Below the pieces are notes generated by a model, which was not told the DNA's origin, did no database searches, and was given only the letters and a program-made list of their open reading frames with translations. Source: Pecten maximus (lineage: Eukaryota). From it: a DNA stretch of 64,000 bases. Positions 10,118 through 41,600 of the stretch are shown here, piece after piece (the first letter of the stretch is position 1; each line of letters begins with the position of its first letter). The position numbers were made by a program, and so were the translations under genes. The stretch spans positions 40,114,001-40,178,000 of the forward strand of contig NC_047016.1 of assembly GCF_902652985.1 (NCBI RefSeq). Reading direction: 5' to 3'.

Positions 10118-11097
10118 ATGGCGGCAATCATGGATTAGGCCTATGGACTGACCAGAAAAATATCAACATTTGGTAAGGACCATCTCGGGATCATTTCAGG
10201 TAAGGTAGAACTTGAGAAGAAGTTTGAAATAAGTGTTGTTCAGGAAATTGAAAACTATGATTGCGCAAGCATGTTACAAAATGGCAACCGTGTCTGCCAT
10301 GTTTAGATTTTACGAGGCTGAAAAATAGCAACACTTTGTTGGCTACCCTTTCTAATCATCCTCACCGATTTCCAGCTCTATGGCACCAGTGTAAGAAGCG
10401 AAGTATAAAATGCGTTATTCATTTCAAGATGGCTGCCTCGGACCTACCCGAAAAATAACAATACTTAGATCTAGTCAGGGCCATCTCGGGAACATTCCAG
10501 GAAAGTTTCAGCTTTCAGTTCAGTGGAACTCGAGAAGTTTGAAATGTGAAAACGGACGGCGCATGACGACGGACGAAGTACGATTGCTATAAAATGGTCC
10601 CCCAAGAAATAAGAACAAGAGTATAAGAAATATAATGTTAAAGTTTATTTAGATAAAACAGTGTGGCACTAGTGATACTTGCAATTGTTAAAAAATCATA
10701 ACAGCTTTAATTATAGAACAATATAACAGTGTTGCTAAGTGACATTATAGAACCAAATGTGCTGATAATATACAAACACAACATAAGAATATGACAATAA
10801 ACAAACAATATTACGATAAACAAACAACATAACAATATGACAACATTATAAATACAACAATACAAAATGACATAGAAACACGCCGAAACAATGACAATAT
10901 ACAAACAATATATGATATACAAACACATTAATACAACAATATGACAACATGCAAACACAGCATCACACATTTGTGCTGATCAAACACTAATCAATTATAC
11001 GTAGCACTAACGTCTATGGATATCGGAATTACCGAGATTAACCTATCACATTATCAGTCTATCACACGCCCCTCCAGAGAATGCTGTAGTTGGTCTA

Positions 11098-12101
11098 TCA
11101 CACGCCCCTCCAGAGAATGCTGTAGTTGGTCGTAGACATCCTGGCTAGCTCGTCAGTCTCCACGGTCCTTCCCGATGTGGCTGGCATCTCCAAGTCTGGG
11201 TCTCCTCCCAGGGAAGTGAGGACAAGGGCAGATAACTCCTGGACCTGGCGATTCTTCGTGGATCGGTACTGGTCAAACATCCTGCGGACACCCTGGATGA
11301 TGGACTTGCGGGTCAGTAGGTGGAGAACAAGGCTGTGGGCATCGTCAAGTGTGGATAGGAAAAGTTGTCGGTCAAGGCGGGTCAACTGGTCATCTGGAAT
11401 AAAAGATTAAATACATGTATATGTTACTATGTTCAAAGACATTATTCAAGATAAGATCTATCGCACATTGTCCAATAAAAAAAAAAAAATAGAAACTGGA
11501 CATAAGAGTTACGACCGGAAATAAACACACAAGTGTTGATCCCTTTAAAAAAGTCTATATACCAGAAAAAAACCATTTGATTTATATTGAAATGATACAG
11601 TATAGAAATAATCTATTTATTTAGCATTTCTTTGTTGGTATGAAAAACGAACTTTCAACAATTTTAATTTAAACACCTTAAGAATGTGGAATTACGATTC
11701 ATTCTAAATATTTGGTTTGTACATGTATGGTGGAAGAACTTCCTAACTTGTTATTACATTATTACATATTTCATCACAATGTATGGATGGTTTTATTGAG
11801 AAACTAACTGAATTAAAAATAATAAGATAGGATATTTACCCTAACAATACAATTATCCTGAAGTGGGTTTGAGCAATTTAATTAAAGTTATTAAAAAGCG
11901 TTGAAAAAAATGAAGAAAAAATATAAGTTTGATATTGTGCTTTCTAAGAATTAATAATGTTTACATCAAAATAATAGCTTTTTTATCTTAACAATACATA
12001 CCTAAGAAGTTGACCTGCTTGGCAGCGTTGTCGTGGGCCAGTAACAGACTCTGGAGTTTCTGGGCGTAGTACACAACATCAGTAGAGGTCATCTCAGCCA
12101 T
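11098..12101 (-). CDS. Multicopy 131-aa orphan protein, copy 1 (2 exons)
   Basis: Exon 1 12101-12002 (MAEMTSTDVVYYAQKLQSLLLAHDNAAKQVNFL, strong Kozak ACCATGG, donor G|GTATGT), exon 2 11393-11098 (acceptor TTCCAG|, DDQLTRLDRQ...SILWRGV*); 396 nt, phase-1 intron of 608 bp. Confidence 0.88.
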
Positions 12102-12329
12102 GGTACAGGGTAGAGGTCAATTAGTGGGTAGTTCTGGCAGTAGGTATAGAGGCAATGTTGATATCAAATTAGAAAATCGTCTGCTTATATAGACAAGGCT
12201 TGATTTTGATTGGTCTCATCACTTAATCAGTTGCATTGGTCGGAAGAATTAACTCCTCCCATATTTTGATTATCTTAATTACACTTAAACAGTTTTACCG
12301 TTAAATGTGAGTAGATATTGTAACGGTGT

Positions 12330-12873
12330 TGAGATCAAAGGTTTCTTGTCCAGATATGGCTTGGTTTTACCGTACAGGTAATTAGAGGTGGAAATGGAGG
12401 TAAGATCAAAGGTTTCTTGTCCAGGTATGGCTTGGTGTTACTGTACAGGTAATTAGTGGTGGTACTGGAGGTAAGATCAAAGGTTTCTTGTCCAGGTATG
12501 GCTTGGTGTTACTGTACAGGTAATTAGAGGTGGAAATGGAGATAAGATCAAAGGTTTCTTGTCCAGGTATGGCTTGGTTTTACTGTACGGGTAATTAGAG
12601 GTGGTACTGGAGGTAAGATCAAAGGCCTCTTGTCCAGGTATGGCTTGGCGTTACTGTACAGGTAATTAGAGGTGATACTGGAGGTAAGATCAAAGGCCTC
12701 TTGTCCAGGTATGGCTTGGTGTTACTGTACAGGTAATTAGAGGTGATACTGGAGGTAAGATCAAAGGTCTCTTGTCCAGGTATGGCTTGGTGTTACTGTA
12801 CAGGTAATTAGTGGTGGTACTGGAGGTAAGATCAAAGGCCTCTTGTCCTGGTATGGCTTGGTGTTATTGTACA
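12330..12873 (-). promoter_or_regulatory. 71-bp tandem array upstream of copy 1; 8 units, 8 intact TCF/LEF sites
   Basis: AGATCAAAGG at 12332, 12403, 12474, 12545, 12616, 12687, 12758, 12829; unit also has TAATTA and two CAGGTA. Repeat is certain; regulatory role is inferred. Confidence 0.7.
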
Positions 12874-13444
12874 GTTGCAAATTGATTTGACTAAGTTGAC
12901 TATTGACTTAGGTATTCCAAGTGTTATATACAACATACAATAATGTACAGTTCATTACGGCGATGGAAAATCAAATAAATTATACATTTTTCATTACGTC
13001 CTTGTAGATTGTTTCTGCACTGACTAACGACAAAATGTGTCGGAATACAAAAAAAAAATATGGACATATGTTAAATTGAAAAGGTACGTGACAAAGAGAA
13101 GCCAGTTTTACGTTAGCAGGAAGTGACCGACTTAATAATATTGGAAATCAAGTTAACCATGATGTTTGGAACGTAATGTGAAATTAAGTTTTAGATATTT
13201 GCCTAAGTTACACAGTTCCTTTTTATCCTGAACGGTTAATAATTGAACCAGTTTATAAAATGATGGCCGATTCCAGTAATATTTCTTTATATATCTTTTA
13301 CGTAAATCAATATAAAGAGGACAGATAAGCATGAAATGAAATTCATCTTCTATCAAATTTTGAGTTCAGTTAATGCAAAATCCGTGTTCTATTGAAATAT
13401 TTTGGAATCTACCTTCTTCAATATGTAATTGATGAGACGATAAT

Positions 13445-14595
13445 CGAATAGGTGATATCACCAATTCATTTTTCAAATAAGTGATATCACCTATTCGAAT
13501 AGGTGATATCACTTAATGAAACGAATAGGTGATATCACCAATTCATTTTTCAAATAAGTGATATCACCTATTCGAATAGGTGATATCACCCATTCGAATA
13601 GGTGATATCACTTAATGAAACGAATAGGTGATATCACTTATTCGAATAGGTGATATCACTCATTCGAATAGGTGATATCACCAATTGGAATAGGTGATAT
13701 CACTTAAAAATATTCTTAAGTGATATCACATATTTGAATAGGTGATATCACCCATTCGAATAGGTGATATCACTTATAAAATTCTTAAGTGATATCATCT
13801 ATTCGAATGAGTGATATCACCTATACGAATAGGTGATATCACTTATGAAATTTTATAAGTGATATCACCTATTCGAATTGGTGATATCACCTATTCGAAT
13901 GAGTGATATCACCTATTCAATCAGTGATATCACCTATTCGAATAGGTGATATCACCAATTCATTTTTCAAATAAGTGATATCGACTATTCGTTTCATTAA
14001 GTGATATCACCTATTCGAATGAGTGATATCACCTATTCGTTTCAATAAGTGATATCACCTATTCGAATGAGTGATATCACCTATTCGAATGGGTGATATC
14101 ACTTAATGAAACGAATAGGTGATATCACTTATTCGAATAGGTGATATCACTCATTCGAATAGGTGATATCACTTTAAAAAGTTCTTAAGTGATATCACCT
14201 ATTTGAATAGGTGATATCACTCATTTGAATAGGTGATATCACCAAATGGGAATAAATAGTAAAACGGCGCCCCATAGATATCACCTGTTCGAATAGGTGA
14301 TATCACTTAAGAATATTTTTAAGTGATATCACCTATTCCAATTGGTGATATCAACTATTCGAATGAGTGATATCACCTATTCGAATGAGTGATATCGCCT
14401 ATTCGTTTCATTAAGTGATATCACCTATTCGAATGGGTGATATCATCTATTCGAATGGGTGATATCACTTATTTGAAAAATGAATTGGTGATATCACCTA
14501 TTCGAATAGGTTATATCACTGACTGAATAGGTGATATCACTGATTGAATAGGTGATATCACCAAATGGGAATAAATAGTAAAACGGCGCCCCATA
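13445..14595. repeat. Duplicated, left-truncated copy of the GTGATATCAC palindromic array
   Basis: Same variant order as 8967-10117, including both right-hand termini. Confidence 0.9.
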
Positions 14596-15575
14596 ATGGC
14601 GGCAATCATGGATTAGGCCTATGGACTGACCAGAAAAATATCAACATTTGGTAAGGACCATCTCGGGATCATTTCAGGTAAGGTAGAACTTGAGAAGAAG
14701 TTTGAAATAAGTGTTGTTCAGGAAATTGAAAACTATGATTGCGCAAGCATGTTACAAAATGGCAACCGTGTCTGCCATGTTTAGATTTTACGAGGCTGAA
14801 AAATAGCAACACTTTGTTGGCTACCCTTTCTAATCATCCTCACCGATTTCCAGCTCTATGGCACCAGTGTAAGAAGCGAAGTATAAAATGCGTTATTCAT
14901 TTCAAGATGGCTGCCTCGGACCTACCCGAAAAATAACAATACTTAGATCTAGTCAGGGCCATCTCGGGAACATTCCAGGAAAGTTTCAGCTTTCAGTCCA
15001 GTGGAACTCGAGAAGTTTGAAATGTGAAAACGGACGGCGCATGACGACGGACGAAGTACGATTGCTATAAAATGGTCCCCCAAGAAATAAGAACAAGAGT
15101 ATAAGAAATATAATGTTAAAGTTTATTTAGATAAAACAGTGTGGCACTAGTGATACTTGCAATTGTTAAAAAATCATAACAGCTTTAATTATAGAACAAT
15201 ATAACAGTGTTGCTAAGTGACATTATAGAACCAAATGTGCTGATAATATACAAACACAACATAAGAATATGACAATAAACAAACAATATTACGATAAACA
15301 AACAACATAACAATATGACAACATTATAAATACAACAATACAAAATGACATAGAAACACGCCGAAACAATGACAATATACAAACAATATATGATATACAA
15401 ACACATTAATACAACAATATGACAACATGCAAACACAGCATCACACATTTGTGCTGATCAAACACTAATCAATTATACGTAGCACTAACGTCTATGGATA
15501 TCGGAATTACCGAGATTAACCTTTCACATTATCAGTCTATCACACGCCCCTCCAGAGAATGCTGTAGTTGGTCTA

Positions 15576-16581
15576 TCACACACCCCTCCAGAGAATGCTG
15601 TAGTTGGTCGTAGACATCCTGGCTAGCTCGTCAGTCTCCACGGTCCTTCCCGATGTGGCTGGCATCTCCAAGTCTGGGTCTCCTCCCAGGGAAGTGAGGA
15701 CAAGGGCAGATAACTCCTGGACCTGGCGATTCTTCGTGGATCGGTACTGGTCAAACATCCTGCGGACACCCTGGATGATGGACTTGCGGGTCAGTAGGTG
15801 GAGAACAAGGCTGTGGGCATCGTCAAGTGTGGATAGGAAAAGTTGTCGGTCAAGGCGGGTCAACTGGTCATCTGGAATAAAAGATTAAATACATGTATAT
15901 GTTACTATGTTCAAAGACATTATTCAAGATAAGATCTATCGCACATTGTCCAATAAAAAAAAAAAAATAGAAACTGGACATAAGAGTTACGACCGGAAAT
16001 AAACACACAAGTGTTGATCCCTTTAAAAAAGTCTATATACCAGAAAAAAAACCATTTGATTTATATTGAAATGATACAGTATAGAAATAATCTATTTATT
16101 TAGCATTTCTTTGTTGGTATGAAAAACGAACTTTCAACAATTTTAATTTAAACACCTTAAGAATGTGGAATTACGATTCATTCTAAATATTTGGTTTGTA
16201 CATGTATGGTGGAAGAACTTCCTAACTTGTTGGATTATTACATATTTCATCACAATGTATGGATGGTTTTATTGAGAAACTAACTGAATTAAAAATAATA
16301 AGATAGGATATTTACCCTAACAATACAATTATCCTGAAGTGGGTTTGAGCAATTTAATTAAAGTTATTAAAAAGCGTTGAAAAAAAAGGATGAAGAAAAA
16401 ATATAAGTTTGATATTGTGCTTTCTAAGAATTAATAATGTTTACATCAAAATAATAGCTTTTTTATCTTAACAATACATACCTAAGAAGTTGACCTGCTT
16501 GGCAGCGTTGTCATGGGCCAGTAACAGACTCTGGAGTTTCTGGGCGTAGTACACAACATCAGTAGAGGTCATCTCAGCCAT
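15576..16581 (-). CDS. Multicopy 131-aa orphan protein, copy 2 (2 exons)
   Basis: Exons 16581-16482 and 15871-15576; same protein as copy 1; part of the 4.48-kb tandem duplication. Confidence 0.85.
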
Positions 16582-16809: not shown

Positions 16810-17353
16810 TGAGATCAAAGGTTTCTTGTCCAGATATGGCTTGGTTTTACTGTACAGGTAATTAGAGGTGGAAATGGAGGTAAGATCAAAGGTTTCTTGT
16901 CCAGGTATGGCTTGGTGTTACTGTACAGGTAATTAGTGGTGGTACTGGAGGTAAGATCAAAGGTTTCTTGTCCAGGTATGGCTTGGTGTTACTGTACAGG
17001 TAATTAGAGGTGGAAATGGAGGTAAGATCAAAGGTTTCTTGTCCAGGTATGGCTTGGTTTTACTGTACAGGTAATTAGAGGTGGTACTGGAGGTAAGATC
17101 AAAGGCCTCTTGTCCAGGTATGGCTTGGCGTTACTGTACAGGTAATTAGAGGTGATACTGGAGGTAAGATCAAAGGTCTCTTGTCCAGGTATGGCTTGGT
17201 GTTACTGTACAGGTAATTAGAGGTGGTACTGGAGGTAAGATCAAAGGTCTCTTGTCCAGGTATGGCTTGGTGTTACTGTACAGGTAATTAGAGTTGGTAC
17301 TGGAGGTAAGATCAAAGGTCCCTTGTCCAGATATGGCTTGGTGTTACTGTACA
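16810..17353 (-). promoter_or_regulatory. 71-bp tandem array upstream of copy 2; 8 units
   Basis: AGATCAAAGG every 71 bp from 16812 to 17309. Confidence 0.7.
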
Positions 17354-17633
17354 GTTGCAAATTGATTTGACTAAGTTGACTATTGACTTAGGTATTCCAA
17401 GTGTTATATACAACATACAATAATGTACAGTTCATTACGGCGATGGAAAATCAAATAAATTATACATTTTTCATTACGTCCTTGTAGATTGTTTCTGCAC
17501 TGACTAACGACAAAATGTGTCGGAATACAAAAAAAAAAATATGGACATATGTTAAATTGAAAAGGTACGTGACAAAGAGAAGCCAGTTTTACGTTAGCAG
17601 GAAGTGACCGACTTAATAATATTGGAAATCAAG

Positions 17634-21194: not shown

Positions 21195-21460
21195 TAATAC
21201 AATTTAACAATACATTACATAACAATTTAACACAATACATTACATAACAATATAACACAATACATTACATAACAATATAACACAATACATTACATAACAA
21301 TATAACACAATACATTATATAACAATATAACACAATACATTACATAACAATATAACACAATACATTACATAACAATATAACACAATACATTACATAACAA
21401 TATAACACAATACATTACATAACAATATAACACAATACATTACATTACAATATAACAATA
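21195..21460. repeat. 25-bp tandem repeat in presumptive 3' UTR of copy 3
   Basis: (AACACAATACATTACATAACAATAT)n, about 9-10 copies, between stop and AATAAA (21059-21054, minus). Confidence 0.9.
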
Positions 21461-21579
21461 CACACCATTACAATGTAGAAACACATTCTGTCCATGTCAA
21501 CACTATTAGTAGCACTATGTTTATAGATAGGAAATGTCGATCTCAAACAATCACATTATCAGTCTATCACATTATCAGT

Positions 21580-21723
21580 CTATCACACACCCCTCCAGAG
21601 AATGCTGTAGTTGGTCTATCACACACCCCTCCAGAGAATGCTGTAGTTGGTCTATCACACGCCCCTCCAGAGGATGCTGTAGTTGGTCTATCACACACCC
21701 CTCCAGAGAATGCTGTAGTTGGT
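21580..21723 (-). repeat. 36-bp tandem repeat spanning the stop codon of copy 3 (4 copies)
   Basis: CTATCACACACCCCTCCAGAGAATGCTGTAGTTGGT x4; two copies in genes 1 and 2, one in genes 4 and 5. Confidence 0.95.
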
Positions 21724-22725
21724 AGTAGACATCCTGGCTAGCTCGTCAGTCTCCACGGTCCTTCCCGATGTGGCTGGCATCTCCAAGTCTGGGTCTCCTC
21801 CCAGGGAAGTGAGGACAAGGGCAGATAACTCCTGGACCTGACGGTTCTTGGTGGATCGGTACTGGTCAAACATCCTGCGGACACCCTGGATGATGGACTT
21901 GCGGGTCAGTAGGTGGAGAACAAGGCTGTGGGCATCGTCAAGTGTGGATACGAAAAGTTGTCGGTCAAGGCGGATCAACTGGTCATCTGGAATGAAGAAA
22001 AAATCTGTTACACATTGTACAAAACAAAATACTCTAGCCGGGAACAAAATATAGCAAGCTGAACAGCATGTTGATTTCATATACTTCCGTAAATAAATCA
22101 GACCATATTGAAATTACTTGAATGGCATTATTTTCATATGCTACCATTAACATAAGTTATACTGAAATAATTCAGTAAAACAAAAGCTACCATTGTTATT
22201 TTCACGTAATAGGGATGTAATTTTGAACAAAGTCGTGTCAACAGCTGGTGTTAATTTGTAATTTTACCTTTCTCACTGTTATTGCTCTTTCGTTATTCGT
22301 TATCGATACACGCAACCTTAACCAGTTTTTTTCGTGGTTAAAACTTGCAATTTTATTATTTAACGAAGAACAGGTAACACTGCAAAGATACTGCCATGTT
22401 TGGTTTTTTTAAATTTCTGCAAAAGTAAAATATTCCAAATTATTTACAATTATCCTGAATTGAGTCAATATCATCTCAAAAACGTCAAAAGAAAAAATTG
22501 AGCAATAAAAAAATTCTTTCACGATTAAATGAAATTGCTGGAAGTTTGATATTGTGCTTTGTAAAACTAAAATACTGTTTATAATTTAAAAAAAAAAAAG
22601 AGTTATTTATCCCTACAATACATACCTAAGAAGTTGACCTGCTTGGCAGCGTTGTCGTGGGCCAGTAACAGACTCTGGAGTTTCTTGGCGTAGTACACAA
22701 CATCAGTAGAGGTCATCTCAGCCAT
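21691..22725 (-). CDS. Multicopy 131-aa orphan protein, copy 3 (2 exons)
   Basis: Exons 22725-22626 and 21986-21691; intact frame and splice sites; substitutions Q14K, T38I, L46V; 639-bp intron. Confidence 0.88.
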
Positions 22726-22967: not shown

Positions 22968-23451
22968 AATGGAGGTAAGATCAAAGGTATCATGTCCAGG
23001 TATGGCTTGGTGTTACTGTTCAGGTAATTAGTGGCGGTAATGGAGGTAAGATCAAAGGTCCCTTGTCCATGTATGGCTTGGTGTTACTGTACAGGTAATT
23101 AGTGGTGGTACTGGAGGTAAGATCAAAGGTCCCTTGTCCAGGTATGGCTTGGTGCTACTGTACAGGTAATTAGAGGTGGTACTGGAGGTAAGATCAAAGG
23201 TTTCTTGTCCAGGTATGGCTTGGTGTTACTGTACAGGTAATAAGAGGTGGTACTGGAGGTAAGATCAAAGGTCTCTTGTCCAGGTATGGATTGGTGTTAC
23301 TGTACAGGTAATTAGAGGTGGTACTGGAGGTAAGATCAAAGGTCTCTTGTCCAGGTATGGCTTGGTGTTATTGTCCAGGTAATTAGAGGTGGTACTGGAG
23401 GTAAGATCAAAGGTTTCTTGTCCAGGTATGGCTTGGCGTTACTGTACAGGT
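22968..23451 (-). promoter_or_regulatory. 71-bp tandem array upstream of copy 3; 7 units
   Basis: AGATCAAAGG every 71 bp from 22978 to 23404. Confidence 0.7.
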
Positions 23452-25495: not shown

Positions 25496-25587
<92 letters not shown>

Positions 25588-26942: not shown

Positions 26943-27847
26943 TGAAATAGGTTAAATTTCTTAAGTGCTAGAATGGTGTGTTAAAGGGGATCTGCGATCG
27001 TGAAAATATATATCTCTAAGTTTTATTTTCTTCGGCTTAACAACAGATCTGAGATGGAAAATGTAGTTATAAAAACAGTATTACAACATATACATGTTTA
27101 TTTACTGTTTAAAAACAAAAAAATAAACAACAAAAACAACACACACACACAAAAACGGTATTATTCTAGATGAAGCTTGAACTATCTATGTACTGGGTTT
27201 TTTCAGCTCACTTTTCATGTTTTCCCTGGGAAACAATGCAAATATCTTTATCCAGCTCTATGGTGGTGGTTTGATTCCTGAAATGATAATTAACATATCA
27301 AGCAAATGTGAAAGGACATGAGCAAAATTTTATGTTTTGTGCAAATTAATGTATTCTAAATATAACATGTTTCTATTTGTAATTTTACAACATTAAACAT
27401 ACACTTAAATATTGTCATGTGAATATTAGAATTGTCACAAACTTCACTCTATCAACCATGCGTACCTACACATTCGTACAAATTTACATTCATTACTTTT
27501 ACTTCAAAGTCTTTGTTTTTTACGAAAACATTTACTTTTTAAGTTTGAATTTAAGTTAAAATTTTAAGTTTAATTCCGTTGATGTTATTTACGTCAGTCT
27601 ATAAGACATCGATCATAGCCCAATATTTCTTGTCAGTATCGAGTTGGAAGTATTTTTAAGGCATCATAGCTATCGCCTGGATGATATAAATGTACACAAA
27701 AGTGGTAAGTGTTAAATAGTATGTGTATTGTAACTTCACTTCTACTTTTCAGATTATTTTATTTTGTACGATCTGGATTTCTTTTTTTTTAATTTTCGGT
27801 CAAAATAAATCACAATAACAACAATCACCATCTCAAGTTGGAGACCT

Positions 27848-28402
27848 TACCTGTATAGTAACACCAAGCCATACCTGGACAAGAAACCTTTGATCTTACG
27901 TCCATTACCACCTCTAATTACCTGTACAGTAACACCAAGCCATACCTGGACAGGAGACCTTTGATCTTACCTCCAGTACCACCATTAATTACCTGTACAG
28001 TAACACCAAGCCATACCTAGACAAGAGACCTTTTATCTTACCTCCAGTACCACCACTAATTACCTGTACAGTAACACCAAGCCATACCTAGACAAGAAAC
28101 CTTTGATCTTACCTCCATTACCACCACTAATTACCTGTACAGTAACACCAAGCCATACCTGGACAAGAAACCTTTGATCTTACCTCCAGTACCACCTCTA
28201 ATTACCTGTACAGTAACACCAAGCCATACCTGGACAAGAAACCTTTGATCTTACCTCCATTACCACCACTAATTACCTGTACAGTAACACCAAGCCATAC
28301 CTGGACAAGAGACCTTTGATCTTACCTCCAGTACCACATCTAATTACCTGTACAGTAACACCAAGACAAATACCTGGACAAGAGACCTTTGATCTTACCT
28401 CC
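27848..28402 (+). promoter_or_regulatory. 71-bp tandem array upstream of copy 4; 8 units, 7 intact TCF/LEF sites
   Basis: CCTTTGATCT from 27887 to 28386, one mutated (28029). Confidence 0.7.
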
Positions 28403-28625: not shown

Positions 28626-29489
28626 ATGGCTGAGATGACCTCTACTGATGTTGTGTACTACGCCCAGAAGCTCCAGAGTCTGTTACTGGCCCACGACAAC
28701 GCTGCCAAACAGGTCAACTTCTTAGGTATGTATTGTAGGGATAATTAACATACATTTAGATTTTTTCTATACCTGTTTAATATTTCAAAATCTCAAAGTT
28801 TATTTTTTCATTTTCCCCATTGTTTGTATCTTTGCACTGTTTTCTGTATTTTAGCAGGAAAGAAAACTTTATAATAAATAAAATAAAATAAATAAATTAT
28901 TATTAACCAATATGTGAAAATAACACGATGGATTGTTATTTTTTTCCTGTATTATTTCAGTATAAATATCGTTTATATACTGGTAGTATATGTATATGAA
29001 AAAAATACAAACACATTAATTAATTCTTATCTTCCTGTCCTTTTACATATCTTTCAGCAATATGAAACATAGCTTATCTTCGTACAATGTTGCTATATAT
29101 TTAACTTCGTACAATATGTACTATATTTCATCTTTGTATAATATGTTTTATATTTGTAGAATGTGTAATATATTTTATTTTTTTTTCTTCCAGATGACCA
29201 GTTGACTCGCCTTGACCGACAACTTTTCCTATCCACACTTGACGATGCCCACAGCCCTGTCCTCCACCTACTGACCCGCAAGTCCATCATCCAGGGTGTC
29301 CGCAGGATGTTTGACCAGTACCGATCCACCAAGAATCGTCAGGTCCAGGAGTTATCTGCCCTTGTCCTCACTTCCCTGGGAGGAGACCCAGACTTGGAGA
29401 TGCCAGCCACATCGGGAAGGACCGTGGAGACTGACGAGCTAGCCAGGATGTCTACCACCAACTACAGCATTCTCTGGAGGGGTGTGTGA
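28626..29489 (+). CDS. Multicopy 131-aa orphan protein, copy 4 (2 exons)
   Basis: Exons 28626-28725 and 29194-29489; intact; L55P; 468-bp intron; AATAAA at 29945. Confidence 0.88.
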
Positions 29490-30258
29490 TAGACTGATAA
29501 TGTGATTGGTTAATATCGATAATTCCTGTGTCCATAGACGTTAGTGCTATTAAGTGTTTAATAATTGGTTTCTATACACTGTCATATTGTAAGTTAGCGT
29601 ATTGTTACATTGCATTGTTGTGTTTGTGTATTGTCATTGCATTGTTGTGTTTGTGTATTGTCATATTGCAATTTTGTGTTTGTGTATTGTCATTGTATTG
29701 TGTTTGTACCTTGTTACATTGTATTATTGTGTTTGTATATTGTCATTGTATTATTGTATTTGTACCTTGTCATATTGTATTGTTGTCTGTATATAACATT
29801 GAATTGTTAAGTTCGTTAACTGTTGTATTGTATTTTGTCATATTGTATTATTGTGGTTGTTTATTTTGTATTGTATGAGTAATATGATTTTATAATATTG
29901 AATAATTCTTTCATGTGAATCGCTAGTGCTACATTACTTTATTAAATAAATATTAACATAACAATATCATATCAATTTGTTGTTTATCTATTTATTCTTA
30001 TTTTCTTCCTGGAACGCTAGTCAGTAGCGAGTGACCTATTTCTTATCCTATATACAGAGAGTTCTTCATTCCCTCCCACGGGCGAATGCATGTATAGACA
30101 AAGAGATTTTAACCGTTGAAATCAGATATAGGTATAGTTGAATAAGATATATTTCTATTTACTCGAAAAATACAGATATCTATATATGCAAATAATATAT
30201 CTGTTAATTTCATCTAGTGTTTCTGTATATATGTGGGGAAAAGCAAATAAGTCTTAGA

Positions 30259-33608: not shown

Positions 33609-34158
33609 AAATCTACTGTGTTATACATCAAATCTACTGTGTTATACATCAAATCTACTGTGTTATACATCAAATCTCCTGTATTATACATCAAACATAC
33701 TGTATTATACATCAAATCTCCTGAATTATACATCAAATCTACTGTATTATACATCAAATCTCCTGTATTATACATCAAATCTACTGTATTATACATCAAA
33801 TCTCCTGAATTATACATCAAATCTACTGTATTATACATCAAATCTACTGTATTATACATCAAATCTCCTGAATTATACATCAAACCTACTGCATTATACA
33901 TCAATTCTACTGTATTATACATCAAATCTACTGTATTATACATCAAATCTACTGTATTATACATCAAATATCCTGTATTATACATCAAATCTACTGTATT
34001 ATACATCAAATCTCCTGTATTATACATCAAATCTACTGTATTATACATCAAATATACTGTATTATACATCAAATCTACTGTATTATACATCAAATATACT
34101 GTATTATACATCAAATCTACTGTATTATACATCAAACCTACTGTATTATACATCAAAT
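33609..34158. repeat. 21-bp minisatellite, about 26 copies
   Basis: (AAATCTACTGTATTATACATC)n. Confidence 0.95.
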
Positions 34159-34189
34159 CGTTGTTCGTTAAAAAACATAAAGTGCATTT

Positions 34190-34660: not shown

Positions 34661-35926
34661 AACTTATATGAATATGGTCATTTCACCTCCATTACTGGCT
34701 ATTTTATGTGGTAATAAAAACAAGTTATCTTAACGTTTGTACAATGCATTACTGACTGACCATATTGCGTGTAGTTTAAACTGTGTTTTATTTGTCAATT
34801 TCCATTTAACAATATATATACAACATATAAATTTCTACTTAAAGGGATCAAAAATAAGTGTCAATACACTTATATCTAGACACCTAGAATTATAGGTTGA
34901 CGTTACCTAACAGCATATACATGATAAAACACATCATCGTATCCTAATGGCAATAAAGTCTAATATGAAAACATCAGTTGGAATTTGATCAAATCATTAA
35001 ATACATTGTGGTTGATAGAAAGGGAGAAAAACGTGAAAGTGGGATTTTCTACTGCCATCTGGTTGTAGATATATATTGATTGTGGTATTAATCTCAAATA
35101 ATAGACGTACAAAATATGTACATGCTACGTTAGAAATGTTTGATTGTACAAGAAAATTTTCACAGCAAGGAATATCCTCGTGTTATCGTCGATGGAAAGA
35201 GAATCATCTCCCGACAAACGTATTGTTATGTTATAATTTATGGTATGGTTACAATATACTTATGTCGTAGATAGGAAAAATTATAACACGTTAAAAGAAT
35301 TGTGAAGTATTACTGGTTCTCATACCCATAAATAGATCGATTATGTCGAAAATATTTTAAAATGAAAACGGTGTCAGTTACGTATGGCTGGCACGAATAA
35401 TAATAGCCAACTTCAATAGTGTTATCCTAGAAAGTCTTAAAAACCTGTATTCGCAACTATATATAATTGTGTTTTTCATTCTGGCCAAAGTGTAAGACAT
35501 AGAATGTTTAAAAACTTATCTGTTAATTTTACCTTAAGGTCAAAAATATACCTTTCTAAAGTATCGTACAGGTGAACGCCGTCATTCCGTTGAAACAAGA
35601 AGATGGGAAAAGTTCTTAGGGAAGAACATGCTTGTGTATTGTGTGATTAATGATCTATTGGGGATGAATACCACTATGTTTTTGAATATGATTTTCTTTT
35701 TCGTATTGAAATATGTACATGTACGAATATTCCGTAATACTATATTCAGTATCAAAATACTATAAAATACTCTGAATTATTTTGTACTTATTTGAAAATA
35801 TTGAAAAACTATTCGCTTTTCTCCATTTTATTATGTTAATATTTCAGTTTCTGTGTTAACTATGCCGGTGTAAGCTTTTATTTACATTGATTTTTTGTCT
35901 AAGTGAGTATGAGATAATCTTTTGTT

Positions 35927-36549
35927 CTGTACAGTAAAAACAAGTCATACCTGGACAAGGGACCTTTGATCTTACCTCCAGTACCACCACTAATTACCTG
36001 TACAGTAAAAACAAGTCATACCTGGACAAGGGACCTTTGATCTTATCGCCAGCACCATCACTAATTACCTGTACAGTAACACCAAGCCATACCTGGACAA
36101 GATACCTTAGATCTGGTCTCCAGTACCACCACTAATTACCTGTACAGTAACACCAAGCCATACCTGGAAAAGAGCCCTTTGATCTGGTCTCCAGTACCAC
36201 CACTAATTACCTGTACAGTAACACCAAGCCATACCTGGACAAGAAACCTTTGATCTTACCTCCAGTACCACCACTAACTACCTGTACAGTAACACCAAGC
36301 CATACCTGGACAAAAGCCCTTGAATCTTACCTCCAGTAACACCACTAATTACCTGTACAGTAACACCAAGCCATACCTGGACAAGGAACCTTTGATCTTA
36401 CCTCCAGTACCACCACTAATTACCTGTACATTAACACCAAGCCATAACTGGACAAGATACCTTTGATCTTACCTCCAGTACCACCTCTAATTACCTGTAC
36501 AGTAACACCAAGCCAAATACCTGGACAAGAGACCTTTGATCTTACCTCC
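35927..36549 (+). promoter_or_regulatory. 71-bp tandem array upstream of copy 5; 9 units, 7 intact TCF/LEF sites
   Basis: CCTTTGATCT from 35963 to 36533, two mutated (36105, 36318), both in distal/middle units. Confidence 0.7.
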
Positions 36550-36772
36550 GTTACGATATCTACTCACATTTAACGGTAAAACTGTTTAAATGTAATTAAG
36601 ATAATTACAATTTGGGAGGAGTTCATTCTTGCGACCAATCAAATTGATCAATTGATTTGTCCAATCAAAATCAAGCCTTGTCTGTATAACCGGACGATTT
36701 TCTAATTTGATATCATTATTGCCTCTGTACCTACTGCCAGAACTACCCACTACTTGACCTCTACTCTGTACC

Positions 36773-37707
36773 ATGGCTGAGATGACCTCTACTGATGTTG
36801 TGTACTACGCCCAGAAACTCCAGAGTCTGTTACTGGCCCACGACAACGCTGCCAAGCAGGTCAACTTCTTAGGTATGTATTGTAGGGATAATTAACATAC
36901 ATTTAGATTTTTTTTCTATGTCTGTTCAATATTTTTTCCTCAAATATCAAAATCTATTTTTTTCCCAATTATTAGTTCTTAATCTTCCAATTTAGCGGTA
37001 TTAATATCTTTGCAGTGTTTTCTGTTCTTCGTGAAGTTTCCTTGGAATTGGTTGAGGTAACGTTCATTGATAAAGAATAATCAATTTTAGCAGGAAAGAA
37101 AAAATTATAATAAATCAAATAAAATAAAAAAAATTATCATTAACATGTGAAATATGTGATAATAGCACGATGGATTATTATTATTTTACTGTATTATTTC
37201 AGTATTAATATCGTTTGTTACTGGTAGCATATGAAAAAAATATAAATCAACACATTAATTAATTATCTTCCTTTCCTTCTCTTACCTATCTTTCAACAAT
37301 ACAATGTTGCTATATATTTTTTTTATGACAATGTGTACTATATTTTATCTTTGTATAATATATTTTATTTTTGTAGAATGTGTAATATATTTTTTATTTC
37401 TTTTATTCCAGATGACCAGTTGACCCGCCTTGACCGACAACTTTTCCTATCCACACTTGACGATGCCCACAGCCTTGTTCTCCACCTACTGACCCGCAAG
37501 TCCATCATCCAGGGTGTTCGCAGGATGTTTGACCAGTACCGATCCACCAAGAACCGTCAGGTCCAGGAGTTATCTGCCCTTGTCCTCACTTCCCTGGGAG
37601 GAGACCCAGACTTGGAGATGCCAGCCACATCGGGAAGGACCGTGGAGACTGACGAGCTAGCCAGGATGTCTACGACCAACTACAGCATTCTCTGGAGGGG
37701 CGTGTGA
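36773..37707 (+). CDS. Multicopy 131-aa orphan protein, copy 5 (2 exons)
   Basis: Exons 36773-36872 and 37412-37707; intact; 539-bp intron; AATAAA at 38782. Confidence 0.88.
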
Positions 37708-37877
37708 TAGACTGATAATGTGATAGTTTAATCTCGGTAATTCCTGTGTCCTTGGACTAGTGCTAATAAGTGACTATATTTTGCTATTTCTTTTATAAGG
37801 AGACGAATTAATATAAGCTTTAGGCTTGTTTTCGAATTCTTACATTCATGTAATGTGTACAACTTTGCATTTGCAAT

Positions 37878-38660
37878 GTGTTTGTATATTGTAACACAGT
37901 ATTTGTATATTGTAACATTGTATTGTTGTGTTTGTATATTGTAACACAGTATTTGTATATTGTAACACAGTATTTGTATATTGTAACATTGTATTGTTGT
38001 GTTTGTATATTGTAACACAGTATTTGTATATTGTAACACAGTATTTGTATATTGTAACATTGTATTGTTGTGTTTGTATATTGTAACACAGTATTTGTAT
38101 ATTGTAACATTGTATTGTTGTGTTTGTATATTGTAACATTGTATTGTTGTGTTTGTATATTGTAACATTGTATTGTTGTGTATGTATATTGTAACATTGT
38201 ATTGTTGTGTTTGTATATTGTAACACAGTATTTGTATATTGTAACATTGTATTGTTGTGTTTGTATATTGTAACACAGTATTTGTATATTGTAACACAGT
38301 ATTTGTATATTGTAACATTGTATTGTTGTGTTTGTATATTGTAACACAGTATTTGTATATTGTAACACAGTATTTGTATATTGTAACATTGTATTGTTGT
38401 GTTTGTATATTGTAACATTGTATTGTTGTGTTTGTATATTGTAACATTGTATTGTTGTGTTTGTATATTGTAACATTGTATTGTTGTGTATGTATATTGT
38501 AACATTGTATTGTTGTGTTTGTATATTGTAACACTGTATTGTTTTGTTTGTATATTGTAACATTGTATTGTTTTGTTCGTATATTGTAACATTGTATTAT
38601 TTTGTTCCTATATTGTAACATGGTATTTTTGTGTTTGTATATTGTAACATTGTATTTTTG
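37878..38660 (+). repeat. Compound 29/20-bp TTGTA-rich tandem array in presumptive 3' UTR of copy 5
   Basis: TTTGTATATTGTAACATTGTATTGTTGTG alternating with TTTGTATATTGTAACACAGTA, between stop 37707 and AATAAA 38782. Confidence 0.95.
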
Positions 38661-41600
38661 TTATCATGTTGTTATTATTTTGTTCAATCTGGTTATCTAT
38701 GTATTATTGTCCATGTGATTCATATGATTTTATGTAAATCAGTCTTTAACATGAATCTCCAGTGCTAAATTGTTTTATTTAAATAAATATTAATATTACA
38801 TCATAATAATTTGTTGGGTTTTTTTTTTCTTTATTTCCGGGAGCCATGTACTTACAGGCCATAGCAAATATCTATTTGTTGACAAAATACAGATATTCAT
38901 TTCTAAATAAGAAATTTATATTTGTGAATGAGAGATATTTGTATTCATATATAAATATCTGCATTTAGATTGAGTTATCTGTAACTATTAAATAAAAAGA
39001 TATATTATATCTGTATCGCATTCGAATATCGAAGATATCTGTATTTTAGACAACGCCAATATCTGTCTGTTACACTCGACTATCCCCACTGGTACAATGC
39101 AATCCATTAAAATATTAACTTAATTGAAGATAGATATACATATTCATGATAATATTATTAAAACCATATACATTGCTTGTATTTGACATGAGACTTGTAA
39201 AATGTCTACCATTCATCCTGTGAAATCTTCTGTATGAGGCATCAGAATATCACTGCCATTTAGTTGTTACTGACGAAGCAACAAAGGACTACGACGCCGG
39301 TCATTGTACGTGAAAAATTATGATTTGACCTTTTTTCTTTTTTTTTTTTGGTGTGTGATAGGATCGAGTCGTTGTGGTTTGTATATAGTGCAATATAACT
39401 TGTTATTATCGCCTATCAAGTATTTTGAAAGGAAAGAGAGAGGAAATGTGAAAGTTGTCACTCAGCTGACAAATGATATGCTTTTTGGCTCAGATGCTAG
39501 ATCTGTGGATTATCATGCAGATACCCGGGTTCGAATCTTCTTCTTACATATTCTTTCACAGGTGATTTTGTTGCAAATTGTAAGCAAATCGTACTCCGAC
39601 TACAAAAAATTGTTAAATCGTAGAGAAATAATGTTAGACAGAAGACTGATCCCTGCGATACTCCTGAGGTTATTTTTGTCCAAACGGAAGTTACACTCCA
39701 CTAACACTGGTTGTAGAACAAGACTCGTCAAGTGGTATTGGTATTTCGACATAGTTTGATCATATTTCTCAGAAGTGAACTATTTATTTTTAGTGCTTTG
39801 ACTAAGATTGACAGGCGACATATCTGACCTGAATGCACTGTATCCGTTCAACTTCCGGTAATATCAATAATTCTTCCGTTAATTACATATATACATACAG
39901 ATCTCAATATCCTATATTGGGATACATAATTCATATATACGTTCAAAAATAAACCAAAAGTCCAATCTTCCTATGAAATGTATCTTGATATTAAAGATTT
40001 ACACAGAAATTCGAAAATAAACAACAACAACAACAACAACAAAACAAAGAGACAACAACAAAAACGTAAAATATGGATTTTAAATATGAAAATCTTAACA
40101 AATGCATCCATATTTTATATATATATATATATAAAAGAGCATGTTCTATCAGCCACATTACACAATGAGATAATATGATATCGTGATGAACACTTTCACT
40201 TTATACGATTGCACGATTTAATGTATTGGGACGAAACTGCATCTGAGGTATACTTCATGTATTGATGAGCGAATTTTTATTAAGCGTATGCAAAAGTGTA
40301 ATTGTTACAATTAAATATACACCAATATTATGTATTGCTACATGTATGCATATGTATGGAAGAAAATAAAAAATTTCAAAAAAAAAAAAAAAAAAAATGC
40401 ATCCATATTTGGTGTCATTTCCGCAATGATTTATACATATAATATATCTATGACAAGTCGCACATTATACTGCTTTAAGAACAACCATTGACGAATTGAA
40501 ATCGAGATTTGTGTGTACTTAACTGAAGTGTTCACATTCCTGCAGATAAGTAGTTAACATCGTATATATATGTAAGTATCGTTACTGTAGATTGCTAACC
40601 CTATTAGGGTGACAATCTAGGTCCACTTCATGTCCGGTGTTTCTGACGTCACAAGATAACCACTGTCTTGTGTGATCCCGACATCATCCTCACACGGGAA
40701 GATCCGATGTAGGAGGTTTATGCATGTTATCTATGGAAACACAGGAGTGCGATATACGATTTATTCATAAAATATGTCGTATGTGCTTTAAACAATAAAA
40801 AAATAATAAAAAAACGATATAAGCCTATTGTTTCATTCTTGGACTTCCATGTGGACTCAGAATTGAAAATTAAACTGTGTTATAGAATCTAAAAGTAATT
40901 CTTCAACGAATTCATAAAATTCAATTAATATATATTATGTGTGTGTGGAGTCCGCCTGAAGAAGCCTGAGAGGATAGAAAGCCCTCGACAAAGTCTTGTT
41001 TTTTGTTGTTGTTTTTGTTGTTGTTTTTACAAGTTGACCTTCGCAAGGACACATTCCCTTTCTTTATATGCATTACTTTATGATACTGAATTGATATACC
41101 AAGTACATTAGATAAAGTTCACGACAATCCCGCGAAGCAAAGTTTCACTTACGGGTGCATTGTAAACATTCACTGACATTATTTTTAACATAATTATGCT
41201 GGAGTTGTAATGACGTTTAAATTTTAATAATTTTACTCGTTTGATTAAAATATGTTTTAAGACAAGCTGTATTGTCGACAAAAACACACATATGTAAAAA
41301 AAAAATTATTAAACATTTATGTTTAGCGTAGATGAAACACGTGAGTACGCCTTCATTAGATTTTATGTAGGTCCATACGGGCATCCATACTACCACGTAG
41401 CACATTCTGGAGTATATTTGAGGGAAGTGTTCCGTTTTATACACTTCAGTCTGGCAGAGCAACGGGACATCACCAGTTACTGAAACCTACAGCTTATAGT
41501 TACTAAAGACTTTGGGGAAACCAACTCTACATCTCCTATTAATTATTTCTATCTGTAAACATTGTGGTTGAAAGTGTGTATTTTGAACGGGAAAGTATAG

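What the first reader, a model, noticed from the sequence alone, without database searches (positions are those of the whole stretch)
10640..38790. Five-copy orphan gene cluster, each copy a complete module: 71-bp TCF/LEF array + CCAAT/TATA promoter + 2-exon 131-aa gene + motif-loaded 3' UTR
Seen: five intact copies (ATG at 12101, 16581, 22725 on minus; 28626, 36773 on plus), each with a 7-9-unit 71-bp array ending about 220-250 bp before the ATG, always in the same orientation relative to the gene, and found nowhere else in the window. The ORF track misses exon 1, so the gene is easy to overlook. Established: AGATCAAAGG is the optimal TCF/LEF site used in multimerised Wnt/beta-catenin reporters; short, few-intron, TATA-driven multicopy genes are typical of burst-expressed early embryonic genes. 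Inference: a dosage-amplified, Wnt/beta-catenin-responsive, transiently expressed lineage-restricted gene system. I recognise no named domain.
Basis: partly seen in the sequence, partly recalled or inferred. Interest (0 to 1): 0.92.

Follow-up and report, generated by a model that had tools for sequence, protein, structure and literature searches.

The report
Scallop multicopy gene with conserved enhancer-like arrays
A king-scallop locus holds five expressed copies of a small mollusc-only gene, each preceded by a tandem array of a composite DNA element with a textbook TCF/LEF site, and that element has stayed almost unchanged across four scallop genera, so it is probably a natural multimerised enhancer, though its Wnt responsiveness is untested.

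Summary
There are five intact modules, each with a 71-bp array of 6.8-8.7 units, a CCAAT/CCAAT/TATA promoter, a 100-nt exon 1, a GT..AG intron, a 296-nt exon 2 and a GU-rich 3' region.

The genome is Pecten maximus. The genes are RefSeq LOC117322063 and LOC117322064, both annotated as "uncharacterized".

- **Not a transposon.** Gene and array occur only here in 918 Mb.
- **Real and spliced.** The predicted junction appears in contigs of three runs from three studies.
- **Under selection.** dN/dS against other scallops is 0.11-0.21. Paralogue introns are randomised while exons stay 97-100% identical.
- **Not an orphan.** A profile search finds about 40 representative relatives. Every named one is a mollusc (bivalves and gastropods). 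None has a Pfam or PDB match, and the fold is a generic helical hairpin.

The key new result is that Mizuhopecten, Argopecten and Ylistrum orthologues carry the same upstream array with periods of 62, 71 and 76 bp. A 48-nt core differs at 0-3 positions between genera, against 32-41% of synonymous sites. The rest of the unit varies.

In distant family members without arrays, CTTTGAT is the top 7-mer at -400..-100 (6 of 8 promoters, P=1.7e-4). An HMG-box (TCF-type) input therefore looks ancestral to the family. Wnt/beta-catenin dependence, embryonic timing and protein function remain untested.

The parts
12332..12874 (-). copy 1: upstream 71-bp array (7.6 units)
   Evidence: TRF; 8 exact AGATCAAAGG
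12102..12331 (-). copy 1: proximal promoter (2 CCAAT, TATA) and 5' UTR
   Evidence: alignment A3
12002..12101 (-). copy 1: exon 1 (ATG at 12101, 33 codons + 1 nt)
11098..11393 (-). copy 1: exon 2 including stop
10788..10925 (-). copy 1: GU-rich repeats downstream of the stop, before the first ATTAAA/AATAAA (387 and 449 nt after the stop)
16812..17354 (-). copy 2: upstream 71-bp array (7.6 units)
16482..16581 (-). copy 2: exon 1
15576..15871 (-). copy 2: exon 2 including stop
22970..23451 (-). copy 3: upstream 71-bp array (6.8 units)
22626..22725 (-). copy 3: exon 1 (Q14K variant)
21691..21986 (-). copy 3: exon 2 including stop (T38I, L46V)
21207..21457 (-). copy 3: 25-bp x10 repeat array downstream of the stop
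27847..28402 (+). copy 4: upstream 71-bp array (7.8 units)
28626..28725 (+). copy 4: exon 1
29194..29489 (+). copy 4: exon 2 including stop (L55P; matches LOC117322064)
29599..29876 (+). copy 4: GU-rich 27/56-bp repeats downstream of the stop
35927..36549 (+). copy 5: upstream 71-bp array (8.7 units); a clean instance of the conserved 48-nt core is 36209-36256
36550..36772 (+). copy 5: proximal promoter (CCAAT near 36636 and 36662, TATAA 36685-36689) and 5' UTR
   Evidence: RNA contigs from 36697
36773..36872 (+). copy 5: exon 1
   Evidence: spliced joint
36873..37411 (+). copy 5: intron (539 nt, GT..AG, phase 1)
   Evidence: joint 'skips 539' in 3 runs
37412..37707 (+). copy 5: exon 2 including stop
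37877..38661 (+). copy 5: 29/50-bp GU-rich array, probably inside the 3' UTR. AATAAA lies at 38782-38787 and an RNA contig ends at 38801

Best explanation
This is an old tandem cluster of a small gene (131 aa, a long helical hairpin plus a C-terminal helix). The cluster is shared by at least four scallop genera, and the gene belongs to a family whose named members are all molluscs.

Each copy is a self-contained transcription unit. A TATA/CCAAT core promoter is preceded by a tandem array of 7-9 units, and each unit carries a 48-nt composite cis-element. That element contains a perfect high-affinity HMG-box site of the TCF/LEF type (CCTTTGATC). It also contains a second conserved block with TAATTA, the palindrome CTGTACAG and two CAGGTA motifs.

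The array most likely works as a natural multimerised enhancer. Many copies of the same transcription-factor cassette sit next to the promoter and give high-gain, probably switch-like, transcription. Gene multiplication raises output further.

The HMG-box input looks ancestral to the family. The scallop cluster amplified a piece of an ancestral promoter that already held both blocks.

- **Shown:** the anatomy, the expression and splicing, selection on the protein, constraint on the array core, and recurrence of the HMG motif in distant relatives.
For: **Anatomy.**

**Single locus.** Exon 2, the promoter and the array match only these five places in the 918-Mb assembly.

**Expression.** A GT..AG joint at 36872|37412 appears in contigs of 3 runs from 3 studies. 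Exon contigs reach k-mer depth of about 1300-1900 in run X2. No intronless copy exists in the genome, so the joined form is RNA-derived.

**Selection on the protein.**
- dN/dS is 0.11-0.21 at dS 0.42-0.70 against Mizuhopecten and Ylistrum, and the exon structure is identical.
- Within Pecten, introns of c1, c3, c4 and c5 are at shuffled-sequence identity (0.55-0.73 versus 0.60).
- Exons are 0.97-1.00 identical, the 5' UTR 0.93-0.96 and the promoter 0.71-0.88.

**Array conservation.** Orthologues have arrays of period 62 (Mizuhopecten), 71 (Argopecten) and 76 (Ylistrum), ending about 250-330 bp before the ATG. The unit consensus is identical or differs at 1-3 of 48 core positions. The remaining 13-27 nt change in sequence and length.

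**Hold-out test.**
- In 8 independent family promoters without arrays, ATCAAAG/CTTTGAT is the top 7-mer of all (6 of 8, P=1.7e-4). The eight are 2 Pecten paralogues plus Saccostrea, Haliotis, Mercenaria, Pinctada, Mytilus and Lottia.
- It is also the most enriched sub-word of the core.
- A ninth promoter, LOC117329459, has three such sites at -233, -175 and -160. It also carries the exact 15-mer TAATTACCTGTACAG from the core.
- That 15-mer has only 17 single hits outside the cluster genome-wide.

**Literature.** SCTTTGATS is the high-affinity HMG consensus, and multimerised HMG sites suffice for Wnt responsiveness in TOPFLASH and POPTOP (PMC3916239). Natural Wnt enhancers combine TCF sites with homeodomain and other sites (PMC8421206).
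Against: - There are no functional data. No TCF occupancy, beta-catenin dependence or reporter assay exists for this locus.
- The whole 48-nt core is constrained, so TCF is at most one of several readers.
- Helper sites (GCCGCCR / GCSGS) are needed by C-clamp TCFs for activation in flies and worms. They are absent from the Pecten, Mizuhopecten and Ylistrum units and present only in some Argopecten units.
- One Ylistrum array has CATTGAT or CTTTGAC instead of CTTTGAT. CATTGAT fits Sox-type better than TCF-type specificity.
- Other satellites in this genome carry the same 10-mer. Paired-motif counts are only 120 against 60 in the reversed control, and most of the excess comes from this cluster and one other array.
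- One low-depth spliced contig starts inside the last array unit, so the array may be partly transcribed.
- The tissue or stage of the expressing samples is unknown.
Confidence: 0.6

Rival explanations
1. The array is an enhancer, but the HMG-box site is read by a Sox-family (or other HMG) factor rather than TCF. The module would then not be a Wnt/beta-catenin readout. It could, for example, be a germline or lineage-specific Sox target.
For: ATCAAAG also fits the general Sox consensus WWCAAWG (my own knowledge). The first Ylistrum array carries CATTGAT in several units, which Sox tolerates and TCF does not. No Helper sites occur in three of four genera. Beta-catenin and Sox genes are both reported in scallop gonads (PMC4280107, abstract only).
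Against: The flanks match the TCF optimum exactly: AGATCAAAGG and SCTTTGATS (PMC3916239). Sox sites more often read ACAAAG or ACAAT. Multimerised HMG sites work without Helper sites in TOPFLASH and POPTOP (PMC3916239).
Confidence: 0.2
2. The conserved array has a role other than classical enhancement. It could be a boundary or insulator that keeps tandem copies independent, a chromatin or nucleosome-organising element, an alternative upstream promoter, or a source of small RNAs.
For: The conserved block is long (48-53 nt), more like a multi-finger protein footprint than a single site. A spliced contig in run X3 begins within the last array unit, and low-depth contigs lie inside the array. The arrays sit between head-to-head or head-to-tail copies.
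Against: The position is fixed at about 220-330 bp from the ATG, always on the promoter side and in one orientation, in four genera. The same motifs occur singly in promoters of single-copy paralogues that need no insulation. There is no Rfam match.
Confidence: 0.12
3. The array is a functionless satellite that hitch-hikes with the gene and is homogenised by concerted evolution. The TCF match is then a coincidence in a satellite-rich genome.
For: The window alone has about 25 distinct arrays. Several unrelated satellites elsewhere contain AGATCAAAGG. Bivalve satellites can be very long-lived (my own knowledge).
Against: Within one unit the core is frozen across genera (0-3 of 48 differences) while the rest changes in length and sequence, and synonymous sites of the adjacent gene differ at 32-41%. 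The pre-specified motif is the top 7-mer in hold-out promoters.
Confidence: 0.05
4. The module is a mobile element or is carried by one.
For: LINE/RT fragments lie between copies (13153-13356, 17634-19111, 24229-25280). Four genome-wide singleton hits of the 15-mer belong to a dispersed repeat.
Against: There are only five copies, all at one locus. Homology between copies stops at the array edge and shortly after exon 2, with no terminal repeats. The orthologous clusters are in four genera. The dispersed repeat shares nothing with the core beyond the 15-mer.
Confidence: 0.01

Closest known systems
Synthetic multimerised TCF reporters (TOPFLASH, POPTOP; 6x HMG or HMG-Helper units)
   Same: They use head-to-tail repeats of the high-affinity site AGATCAAAGG / SCTTTGATS directly upstream of a minimal TATA promoter. 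Six to nine copies is the same order as in the reporters (PMC3916239, PMC8421206).
   Different: This array is natural, and its unit is 62-76 bp rather than about 10-27 bp. Each unit carries a further roughly 35 nt of equally conserved sequence. No Helper site occurs in three of four genera. Wnt responsiveness is not shown.
Natural composite Wnt-responsive enhancers (CREAX of Axin2, c-Myc-335: TCF + CDX homeodomain + 'CAG' sites)
   Same: TCF sites are embedded in a grammar with an AT-rich homeodomain-type site and CAG-containing motifs that potentiate the response (PMC8421206). The scallop core has TAATTA, CTGTACAG and CAGGTA next to the TCF site.
   Different: Those enhancers are non-repetitive 'billboards'. 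Here one fixed cassette is repeated in tandem. The identity of the co-factor motifs is only a resemblance and was not tested.
Tandemly repeated enhancers such as the SV40 72-bp repeats and the Xenopus rDNA spacer 60/81-bp repeats (my own knowledge, not checked here)
   Same: Promoter-proximal direct repeats of a multi-site element whose copy number scales promoter output.
   Different: Those are viral or Pol I systems. This is a Pol II protein-coding gene cluster with the array conserved across genera.
Tandemly amplified early beta-catenin/TCF targets such as Xenopus nodal5/6 and siamois/twin (my own knowledge, not checked here)
   Same: Short genes with few introns, multiplied in tandem, with TCF sites close to a TATA promoter. 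Gene dosage is used for a burst of expression.
   Different: Those encode known signalling proteins or homeodomain factors and lack repeated-unit arrays. The timing of expression of the scallop gene is unknown.
Small helical Wnt-pathway modulators (ICAT/CTNNBIP1, Chibby)
   Same: Similar size, all-helical, and it would make sense as a feedback product of a TCF-driven gene.
   Different: No sequence or fold support. Neither family appears in Pfam scans of 30 members or among the fold matches, which are generic hairpins.

Membership tests
TCF/LEF-dependent Wnt-responsive element | High-affinity HMG site (SCTTTGATS) | tested here: met
   6-7 exact SCTTTGATS per Pecten array and 11 in Mizuhopecten. 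37 exact AGATCAAAGG in the window against 0.18 expected. Consensus taken from PMC3916239.
TCF/LEF-dependent Wnt-responsive element | Helper site (GCCGCCR / GCSGS) within about 10 bp of the HMG site for C-clamp TCFs of invertebrates | tested here: not met
   0 GCSGS and 0 GCCGCC in all Pecten, Mizuhopecten and Ylistrum arrays. 2 GCCGCC and 4 GCSGS per Argopecten array. PMC3916239 notes that dense multimerised HMG sites can work without Helper sites.
TCF/LEF-dependent Wnt-responsive element | Activation depends on beta-catenin/TCF, and TCF occupies the element | not testable with these tools
   This needs GSK3-inhibitor or knock-down experiments, reporters, and ChIP or CUT&RUN.
Conserved cis-regulatory element | Evolves more slowly than neutral sequence in orthologous position | tested here: met
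   The core differs at 0-3 of 48 positions between genera. Synonymous sites differ at 32-41% and paralogue introns are at shuffled-level identity.
Transposable element / TE-borne module | Dispersed multicopy distribution with defined termini or target-site duplications | tested here: not met
   Five copies at a single locus. No terminal repeats, and homology ends at the array edge and after exon 2.
Orphan (species- or family-restricted) gene | No homologues outside the lineage | tested here: not met
   41 cluster representatives at E<1e-3. Named ones come from oysters, mussels, pearl oyster, clams, zebra mussel, limpet and abalone. No named hit lies outside Mollusca, so it is phylum-restricted as far as seen.
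Any described protein domain or solved fold family | Significant Pfam, PDB-sequence or specific structural match | tested here: not met
   Pfam gives nothing consistent. The PDB profile search has a best E of 1.2. The model (pLDDT 86) matches only generic helical hairpins, with a flat list at Z<=11.7, below the helical noise level of about 13.
Early zygotic burst-expressed multicopy genes | Short, few introns, TATA promoter, tandem copies | tested here: met
Early zygotic burst-expressed multicopy genes | Transient expression at or around genome activation | not testable with these tools
   Run identities are coded. Only presence, splicing and high contig depth in one run could be seen.
Pumilio-regulated 3' UTR | UGUAHAUA elements | tested here: not met
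   0 in the 1.5 kb after the stop of c1, c2 and c5, 1 in c3 and 2 in c4. The repeats instead fit GU-rich / UGUAUAU-type words. Assigning these to CELF/EDEN-type control rests on my own knowledge.

The most novel reading that the evidence does not exclude
The arrays are an endogenous 'TOPflash'. They would be an ancient, scallop-wide, multimerised TCF/beta-catenin-responsive enhancer built by amplifying an ancestral promoter cassette. It would drive a phylum-restricted multicopy gene as a high-gain Wnt readout, or as a feedback component, in early development or the germline. The same HMG-box logic would be shared by the whole molluscan family, from abalone to oysters.
Probability: 0.3. Interest if true: 0.8.

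Novelty: new variant of a known kind. Interest (0 to 1): 0.62.

Why it matters
Natural enhancers are rarely this legible. Here one fixed cassette of about 50 nt is repeated 7-12 times next to a simple TATA promoter. It is conserved across scallop genera while its spacer drifts, and the same sites occur singly in distant paralogues.

That gives a ready-made experimental system for three things in molluscs, where regulatory tools are scarce:
- enhancer grammar, meaning copy number, spacing and co-factor sites;
- how tandem enhancer arrays arise from ordinary promoters;
- building a native Wnt (or HMG-factor) reporter.

It also flags a conserved, highly expressed, phylum-restricted protein family of unknown function that tends to be tandemly multiplied. 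Scallops, oysters and abalone all show this, with many identical copies in abalone.

Tried and rejected
**Protein identity**
- Pfam on each exon by reference and on 30 family members gave only scattered weak hits.
- A PDB profile search gave nothing.
- The ESM Atlas gave only sub-threshold bacterial hits.
- Foldseek and VIA-align on two models gave generic hairpins only. ICAT and Chibby are not among them.

**Other readings of the locus**
- Transposon reading: rejected.
- Rfam on 8000-40000: no family.
- Pumilio sites in the 3' repeats: absent.
- Helper sites: absent in three genera.
- A related 22-bp array on another chromosome (G000:C11:33429367-33430030) shares the ACCTGTACAGTAA part, but no family gene lies near it.

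**Literature and earlier notes**
- Searches for ten locus identifiers found no paper.
- Searches for mollusc beta-catenin target studies found nothing usable.
- The Pecten oocyte study is a microarray and its probe FASTA is stored truncated, so it was not pursued.
- The scan's earlier findings held nothing on this place. One unrelated note (tandem promoter units at cdc25 elsewhere in the genome) did not affect the reading.

**Steps deliberately not taken**
- The joined two-exon model was never sent to a search tool. Exons were searched apart by reference, and full-length work used the database's own records returned. Exons were joined only inside local scripts, for translation and substitution counts.
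- The N stretch at 58080-58253 was left alone.

Full report
**Check of the observation**

Tandem Repeats Finder reports five 71-bp arrays and no others of that unit:

| Array | Units |
|---|---|
| 12332-12874 | 7.6 |
| 16812-17354 | 7.6 |
| 22970-23451 | 6.8 |
| 27847-28402 | 7.8 |
| 35927-36549 | 8.7 |

AGATCAAAGG occurs 37 times, always inside these arrays, against 0.18 expected.

- BLAST of exon 1, exon 2, promoter, intron and 3' flank of copy 5 against the window finds exactly five copies of each exon. Exon 1 is 98-100% identical and exon 2 is 97.6-100% identical.
- Promoters are 78-90% identical and introns are mostly unalignable.
- All copies have a 100-nt exon 1, a GTATGT...CAG intron of 468-639 nt and a 296-nt exon 2. 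All read through as 131 aa.
- The array ends 223-244 bp before the ATG in every copy, in the same orientation.
- c1 and c2 belong to a 4.49-kb tandem duplication at 99.3% identity.
- The other pairs share only 'array + promoter + exon 1' (about 885 bp, 88-93%) and 'exon 2 plus a few tens of bases' (97-98.7%).

**What the gene is**

Exons were searched separately by reference, as required. Exon 2 finds 131-aa RefSeq proteins of Pecten maximus, so the window is king scallop. They are LOC117322063 isoforms X1-X3 and LOC117322064.

It also finds 131-132-aa orthologues at 84-88% identity in Ylistrum balloti (three), Argopecten irradians and Mizuhopecten yessoensis.

Exon 2, the promoter plus exon 1, and three array units each match only these five places in the 918-Mb assembly. 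The one exception is a distant 22-bp satellite on another chromosome. A transposon is therefore excluded.

**Expression**

Eight small public runs of the same species hold 26-55% of the sampled words of exon 2 plus the 3' flank. Contigs of four of them were laid on 35500-39000.

- The joint that skips 36873-37411 (GT..AG) is present in contigs of three runs from three studies.
- Exon contigs in run X2 have k-mer depths of about 1300-1900. Depth of contigs is a poor measure, so I only say the transcript is abundant there.
- The genome has no intronless copy, so the joined form must come from RNA.
- One low-depth spliced contig in run X3 starts within the last array unit, so some transcripts begin upstream of the TATA box.
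- A contig at 38609-38801 ends about 14 nt after the AATAAA at 38782-38787. In all copies the first AATAAA or ATTAAA lies after the GU-rich repeats. The repeats are therefore probably in the 3' UTR, but this is not proven.
- Sample types are coded, so tissue and stage are unknown.

**Selection**

Against Mizuhopecten and Ylistrum, dS is 0.42-0.70 and dN/dS is 0.11-0.21. Exon lengths and intron phase are identical.

Identity between the four old Pecten copies:

| Region | Identity |
|---|---|
| Introns | 0.55-0.73 (shuffled control 0.60) |
| Exons | 0.97-1.00 |
| 5' UTR | 0.93-0.96 |
| Proximal promoter | 0.71-0.88 |

Only 2-8 codons per pair differ synonymously. The mature mRNA is thus kept nearly identical among old copies. 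The cause may be exon-limited gene conversion or selection at the nucleotide level. I cannot tell which.

**The protein family**

A profile of the nine scallop proteins finds 41 representatives at E<1e-3 among 1.84 billion. Nearly all are 90-200 aa.

Every named one is a mollusc:
- Saccostrea (tandem pairs), Crassostrea, Mytilus, Pinctada, Dreissena, Mercenaria, Ruditapes and Lottia;
- Haliotis, with many identical tandem copies 2.4 kb apart;
- five further Pecten paralogues.

So the gene is not an orphan but a member of a phylum-restricted family. It has no Pfam, PDB-sequence or Atlas match.

With the 30-sequence alignment, AlphaFold gives a confident model (pLDDT 86, pTM 0.69). It has helices at 6-49 and 53-94 forming a long hairpin, plus a C-terminal helix at 115-130. 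Fold searches return only a flat list of generic hairpins such as ESCRT-III, Vipp1, ING and prefoldin, at Z<=11.7. That is below the level that is meaningful for helical models. The protein's function is unknown.

**The array is conserved**

This is the main new result. The orthologous loci all carry an array in the same place and orientation:

| Genus | Period | Units or arrays |
|---|---|---|
| Mizuhopecten | 62 bp | 11.8 units, ending 264 bp before the ATG |
| Ylistrum | 76 bp | arrays before each of three copies |
| Argopecten | 71 bp | arrays before each of three plus-strand copies |

Eighty-two units were cut at a common anchor and aligned. The first 48 nt of the unit (for example window 36209-36256) have a consensus that is identical between Pecten and Ylistrum. 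It differs at 1 position in Argopecten and at 3 in Mizuhopecten. The TAATT that precedes the core across the unit junction is also shared.

The remaining 13-27 nt differ in sequence and length, which explains the different periods. Synonymous sites of the adjacent gene differ at 32-41%. The core is therefore under much stronger constraint than neutral sequence, and the constraint covers far more than the 10-bp TCF motif.

The proximal promoter also has conserved blocks: two CCAAT boxes, the TATA box, a block about 60 bp further upstream and the end of the 5' UTR.

**Is the TCF-type site special?**

On its own, no. This genome is so rich in satellites that other arrays also carry AGATCAAAGG. 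Pairs of the motif within 80 bp number 120 against 60 for the reversed control, and most of the excess comes from this cluster and one 37-bp satellite.

I therefore used family members outside the scallop cluster as a hold-out.

- Eight independent promoters were scanned at -400..-100. They were two Pecten paralogues plus Saccostrea, Haliotis, Mercenaria, Pinctada, Mytilus and Lottia.
- ATCAAAG/CTTTGAT is the most widely shared of all 7-mers, present in 6 of 8. The Poisson-binomial P is 1.7e-4 against windows of the same loci. Any 7-mer reaches 6 in only 4% of random trials.
- Among all 6-8-mers of the core it is the most enriched (P=1.8e-4 over 162 tests). TAATTA is second and not significant after correction.
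- In two Pecten paralogues and in Haliotis the site reads C[CT]TTTGATC on the gene strand, 169-173 bp before the ATG.
- A ninth promoter, LOC117329459, has three sites at -233, -175 and -160. About 170 bp further upstream it has the exact 15-mer TAATTACCTGTACAG of the core.
- That 15-mer has 45 hits genome-wide: 28 in the cluster and 17 singles, against 5 for the control. Only the two paralogue promoters combine it with TCF-type sites. The other singles show no further similarity to the core.
- Another paralogue, LOC117328993, has a small upstream array that shares CTAATTACCTG and ACCTGGAC with the core, in the same orientation.

The simplest reading is that the family's ancestral promoter already held both blocks, and that the scallop cluster multiplied that cassette in tandem.

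**Mechanism**

The site matches the high-affinity HMG consensus SCTTTGATS, and multimerised HMG sites alone make TOPFLASH and POPTOP respond to Wnt signalling (PMC3916239). Natural Wnt enhancers combine TCF sites with homeodomain and other motifs (PMC8421206). That resembles the TAATTA, CTGTACAG and CAGGTA content of the core, but only as a resemblance.

Three points count against a simple TCF reading:
- Invertebrate TCFs use a C-clamp and nearby Helper sites for activation (PMC3916239). Such sites are absent from the Pecten, Mizuhopecten and Ylistrum units and present only in some Argopecten units.
- One Ylistrum array has CATTGAT, which fits Sox better than TCF.
- The first 35 nt of the core must bind something else.

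I therefore commit to 'multimerised composite enhancer with an ancestral HMG-box input' at about 0.6. The proposed embryonic burst expression is plausible from the gene's architecture but untested.

The GU-rich 3' repeats are large in Pecten c5 and in Argopecten, modest in the other copies, and absent in Mizuhopecten, Ylistrum and distant relatives. They have no Pumilio consensus. Any role in mRNA control, for instance of the CELF/EDEN type, is inference from memory.

**Verdict**

The gene is already annotated, as 'uncharacterized'. I found no description of the family, the conserved array or the shared promoter logic.

It is a new variant of known kinds, namely tandemly repeated enhancers and tandemly amplified target genes. 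It offers an unusually clean system to test.

Noticed in passing
window 11057-11131, 15535-15609, 21578-21723: The last 11 codons plus the double stop (TGA TAG) of exon 2 form a 36-bp unit. It is tandemly repeated in frame into the 3' UTR, x2 in c1 and c2 and x4 in c3. c4 and c5 have one copy. The purpose is unknown, and read-through of two stops would be needed to translate it.
   Followed up: partly
window 8645-10084 and 13472-14562: Long arrays of a 22-bp palindrome-containing unit (GGTGATATCACCTATTCGAATA, about 47-61 units) lie 3' of c1 and c2. They are part of the 4.49-kb duplication.
   Followed up: no
RefSeq LOC117322063 isoform X3 (P0002) versus window copies: Isoform X3 combines the exon-1 variant of c3 (K14) with the exon-2 sequence of c1/c2. 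This implies either read-through splicing across neighbouring copies on the minus strand or an annotation artefact from multi-mapping reads.
   Followed up: no
G000:C11:33429367-33430030 (L038 4367-5030): A 22-bp x29 satellite (ACACCTGTACAGTAAGACCATC) resembles the first sub-block of the array core, but no family gene is nearby. TRF also sees a hidden 24-bp sub-period inside the 71-bp units, so the unit may itself be built from three roughly 24-bp subunits.
   Followed up: partly
G000:C11:15478062-15479816; C4:10241809-10242197; C3:40144182-40145605; C3:45357094-45357283; C1:47805713-47805815: Other tandem arrays elsewhere in the genome carry exact AGATCAAAGG in each unit (periods of about 29-37 bp). 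The C4 unit also has a CAGGTGTGG motif. Whether any of them sits at a promoter was not examined.
   Followed up: no
L022 4989-5968 (Argopecten irradians, minus strand): A fourth, divergently oriented copy abuts the first array. Its exon 2 is split into two frames, so it is probably a frameshifted pseudogene.
   Followed up: no
L041/L042 (Haliotis asinina): The abalone homologue (158 aa) is repeated every 2.4 or 4.8 kb, with (CA)n(AG)n microsatellites between copies and many identical protein accessions. Independent tandem amplification seems typical of this family.
   Followed up: partly
L039, L040, L045, L021: In oysters the homologues lie inside an intron of an NVL-like AAA ATPase gene on the opposite strand. 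In Mytilus they lie inside an intron of a Sec7 gene, and in Ylistrum inside a TTL-family gene. Nested positions recur but are not syntenic.
   Followed up: no
window 50240-50944 (+): An ORF of 234 aa matches the rhodopsin-family GPCR domain (7tm_1, E=2.8e-24). It is a neighbouring gene unrelated to the cluster.
   Followed up: no
window 13153-13356, 17634-19111, 24229-25280: LINE-like reverse-transcriptase remnants lie between the modules. There is a weak RVT_1 hit at 18890-19111, and the other ORFs are typical C-terminal LINE ORF2 tails without a Pfam hit.
   Followed up: partly
window 58370-60395 and 58080-58253: A 145-bp satellite (about 14 units) lies beside a 174-base N stretch. The N stretch was left untouched.
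   Followed up: no
window 31509-32080, 33609-34159, 1473-2235, 52660-53055: Further unrelated arrays are present (68-bp x8.4, 21-bp x26, 97-bp x7.9, 62-bp x6.4). The window averages about one array per 2.5 kb. This sets the background against which 'an array near a gene' must be judged.
   Followed up: no
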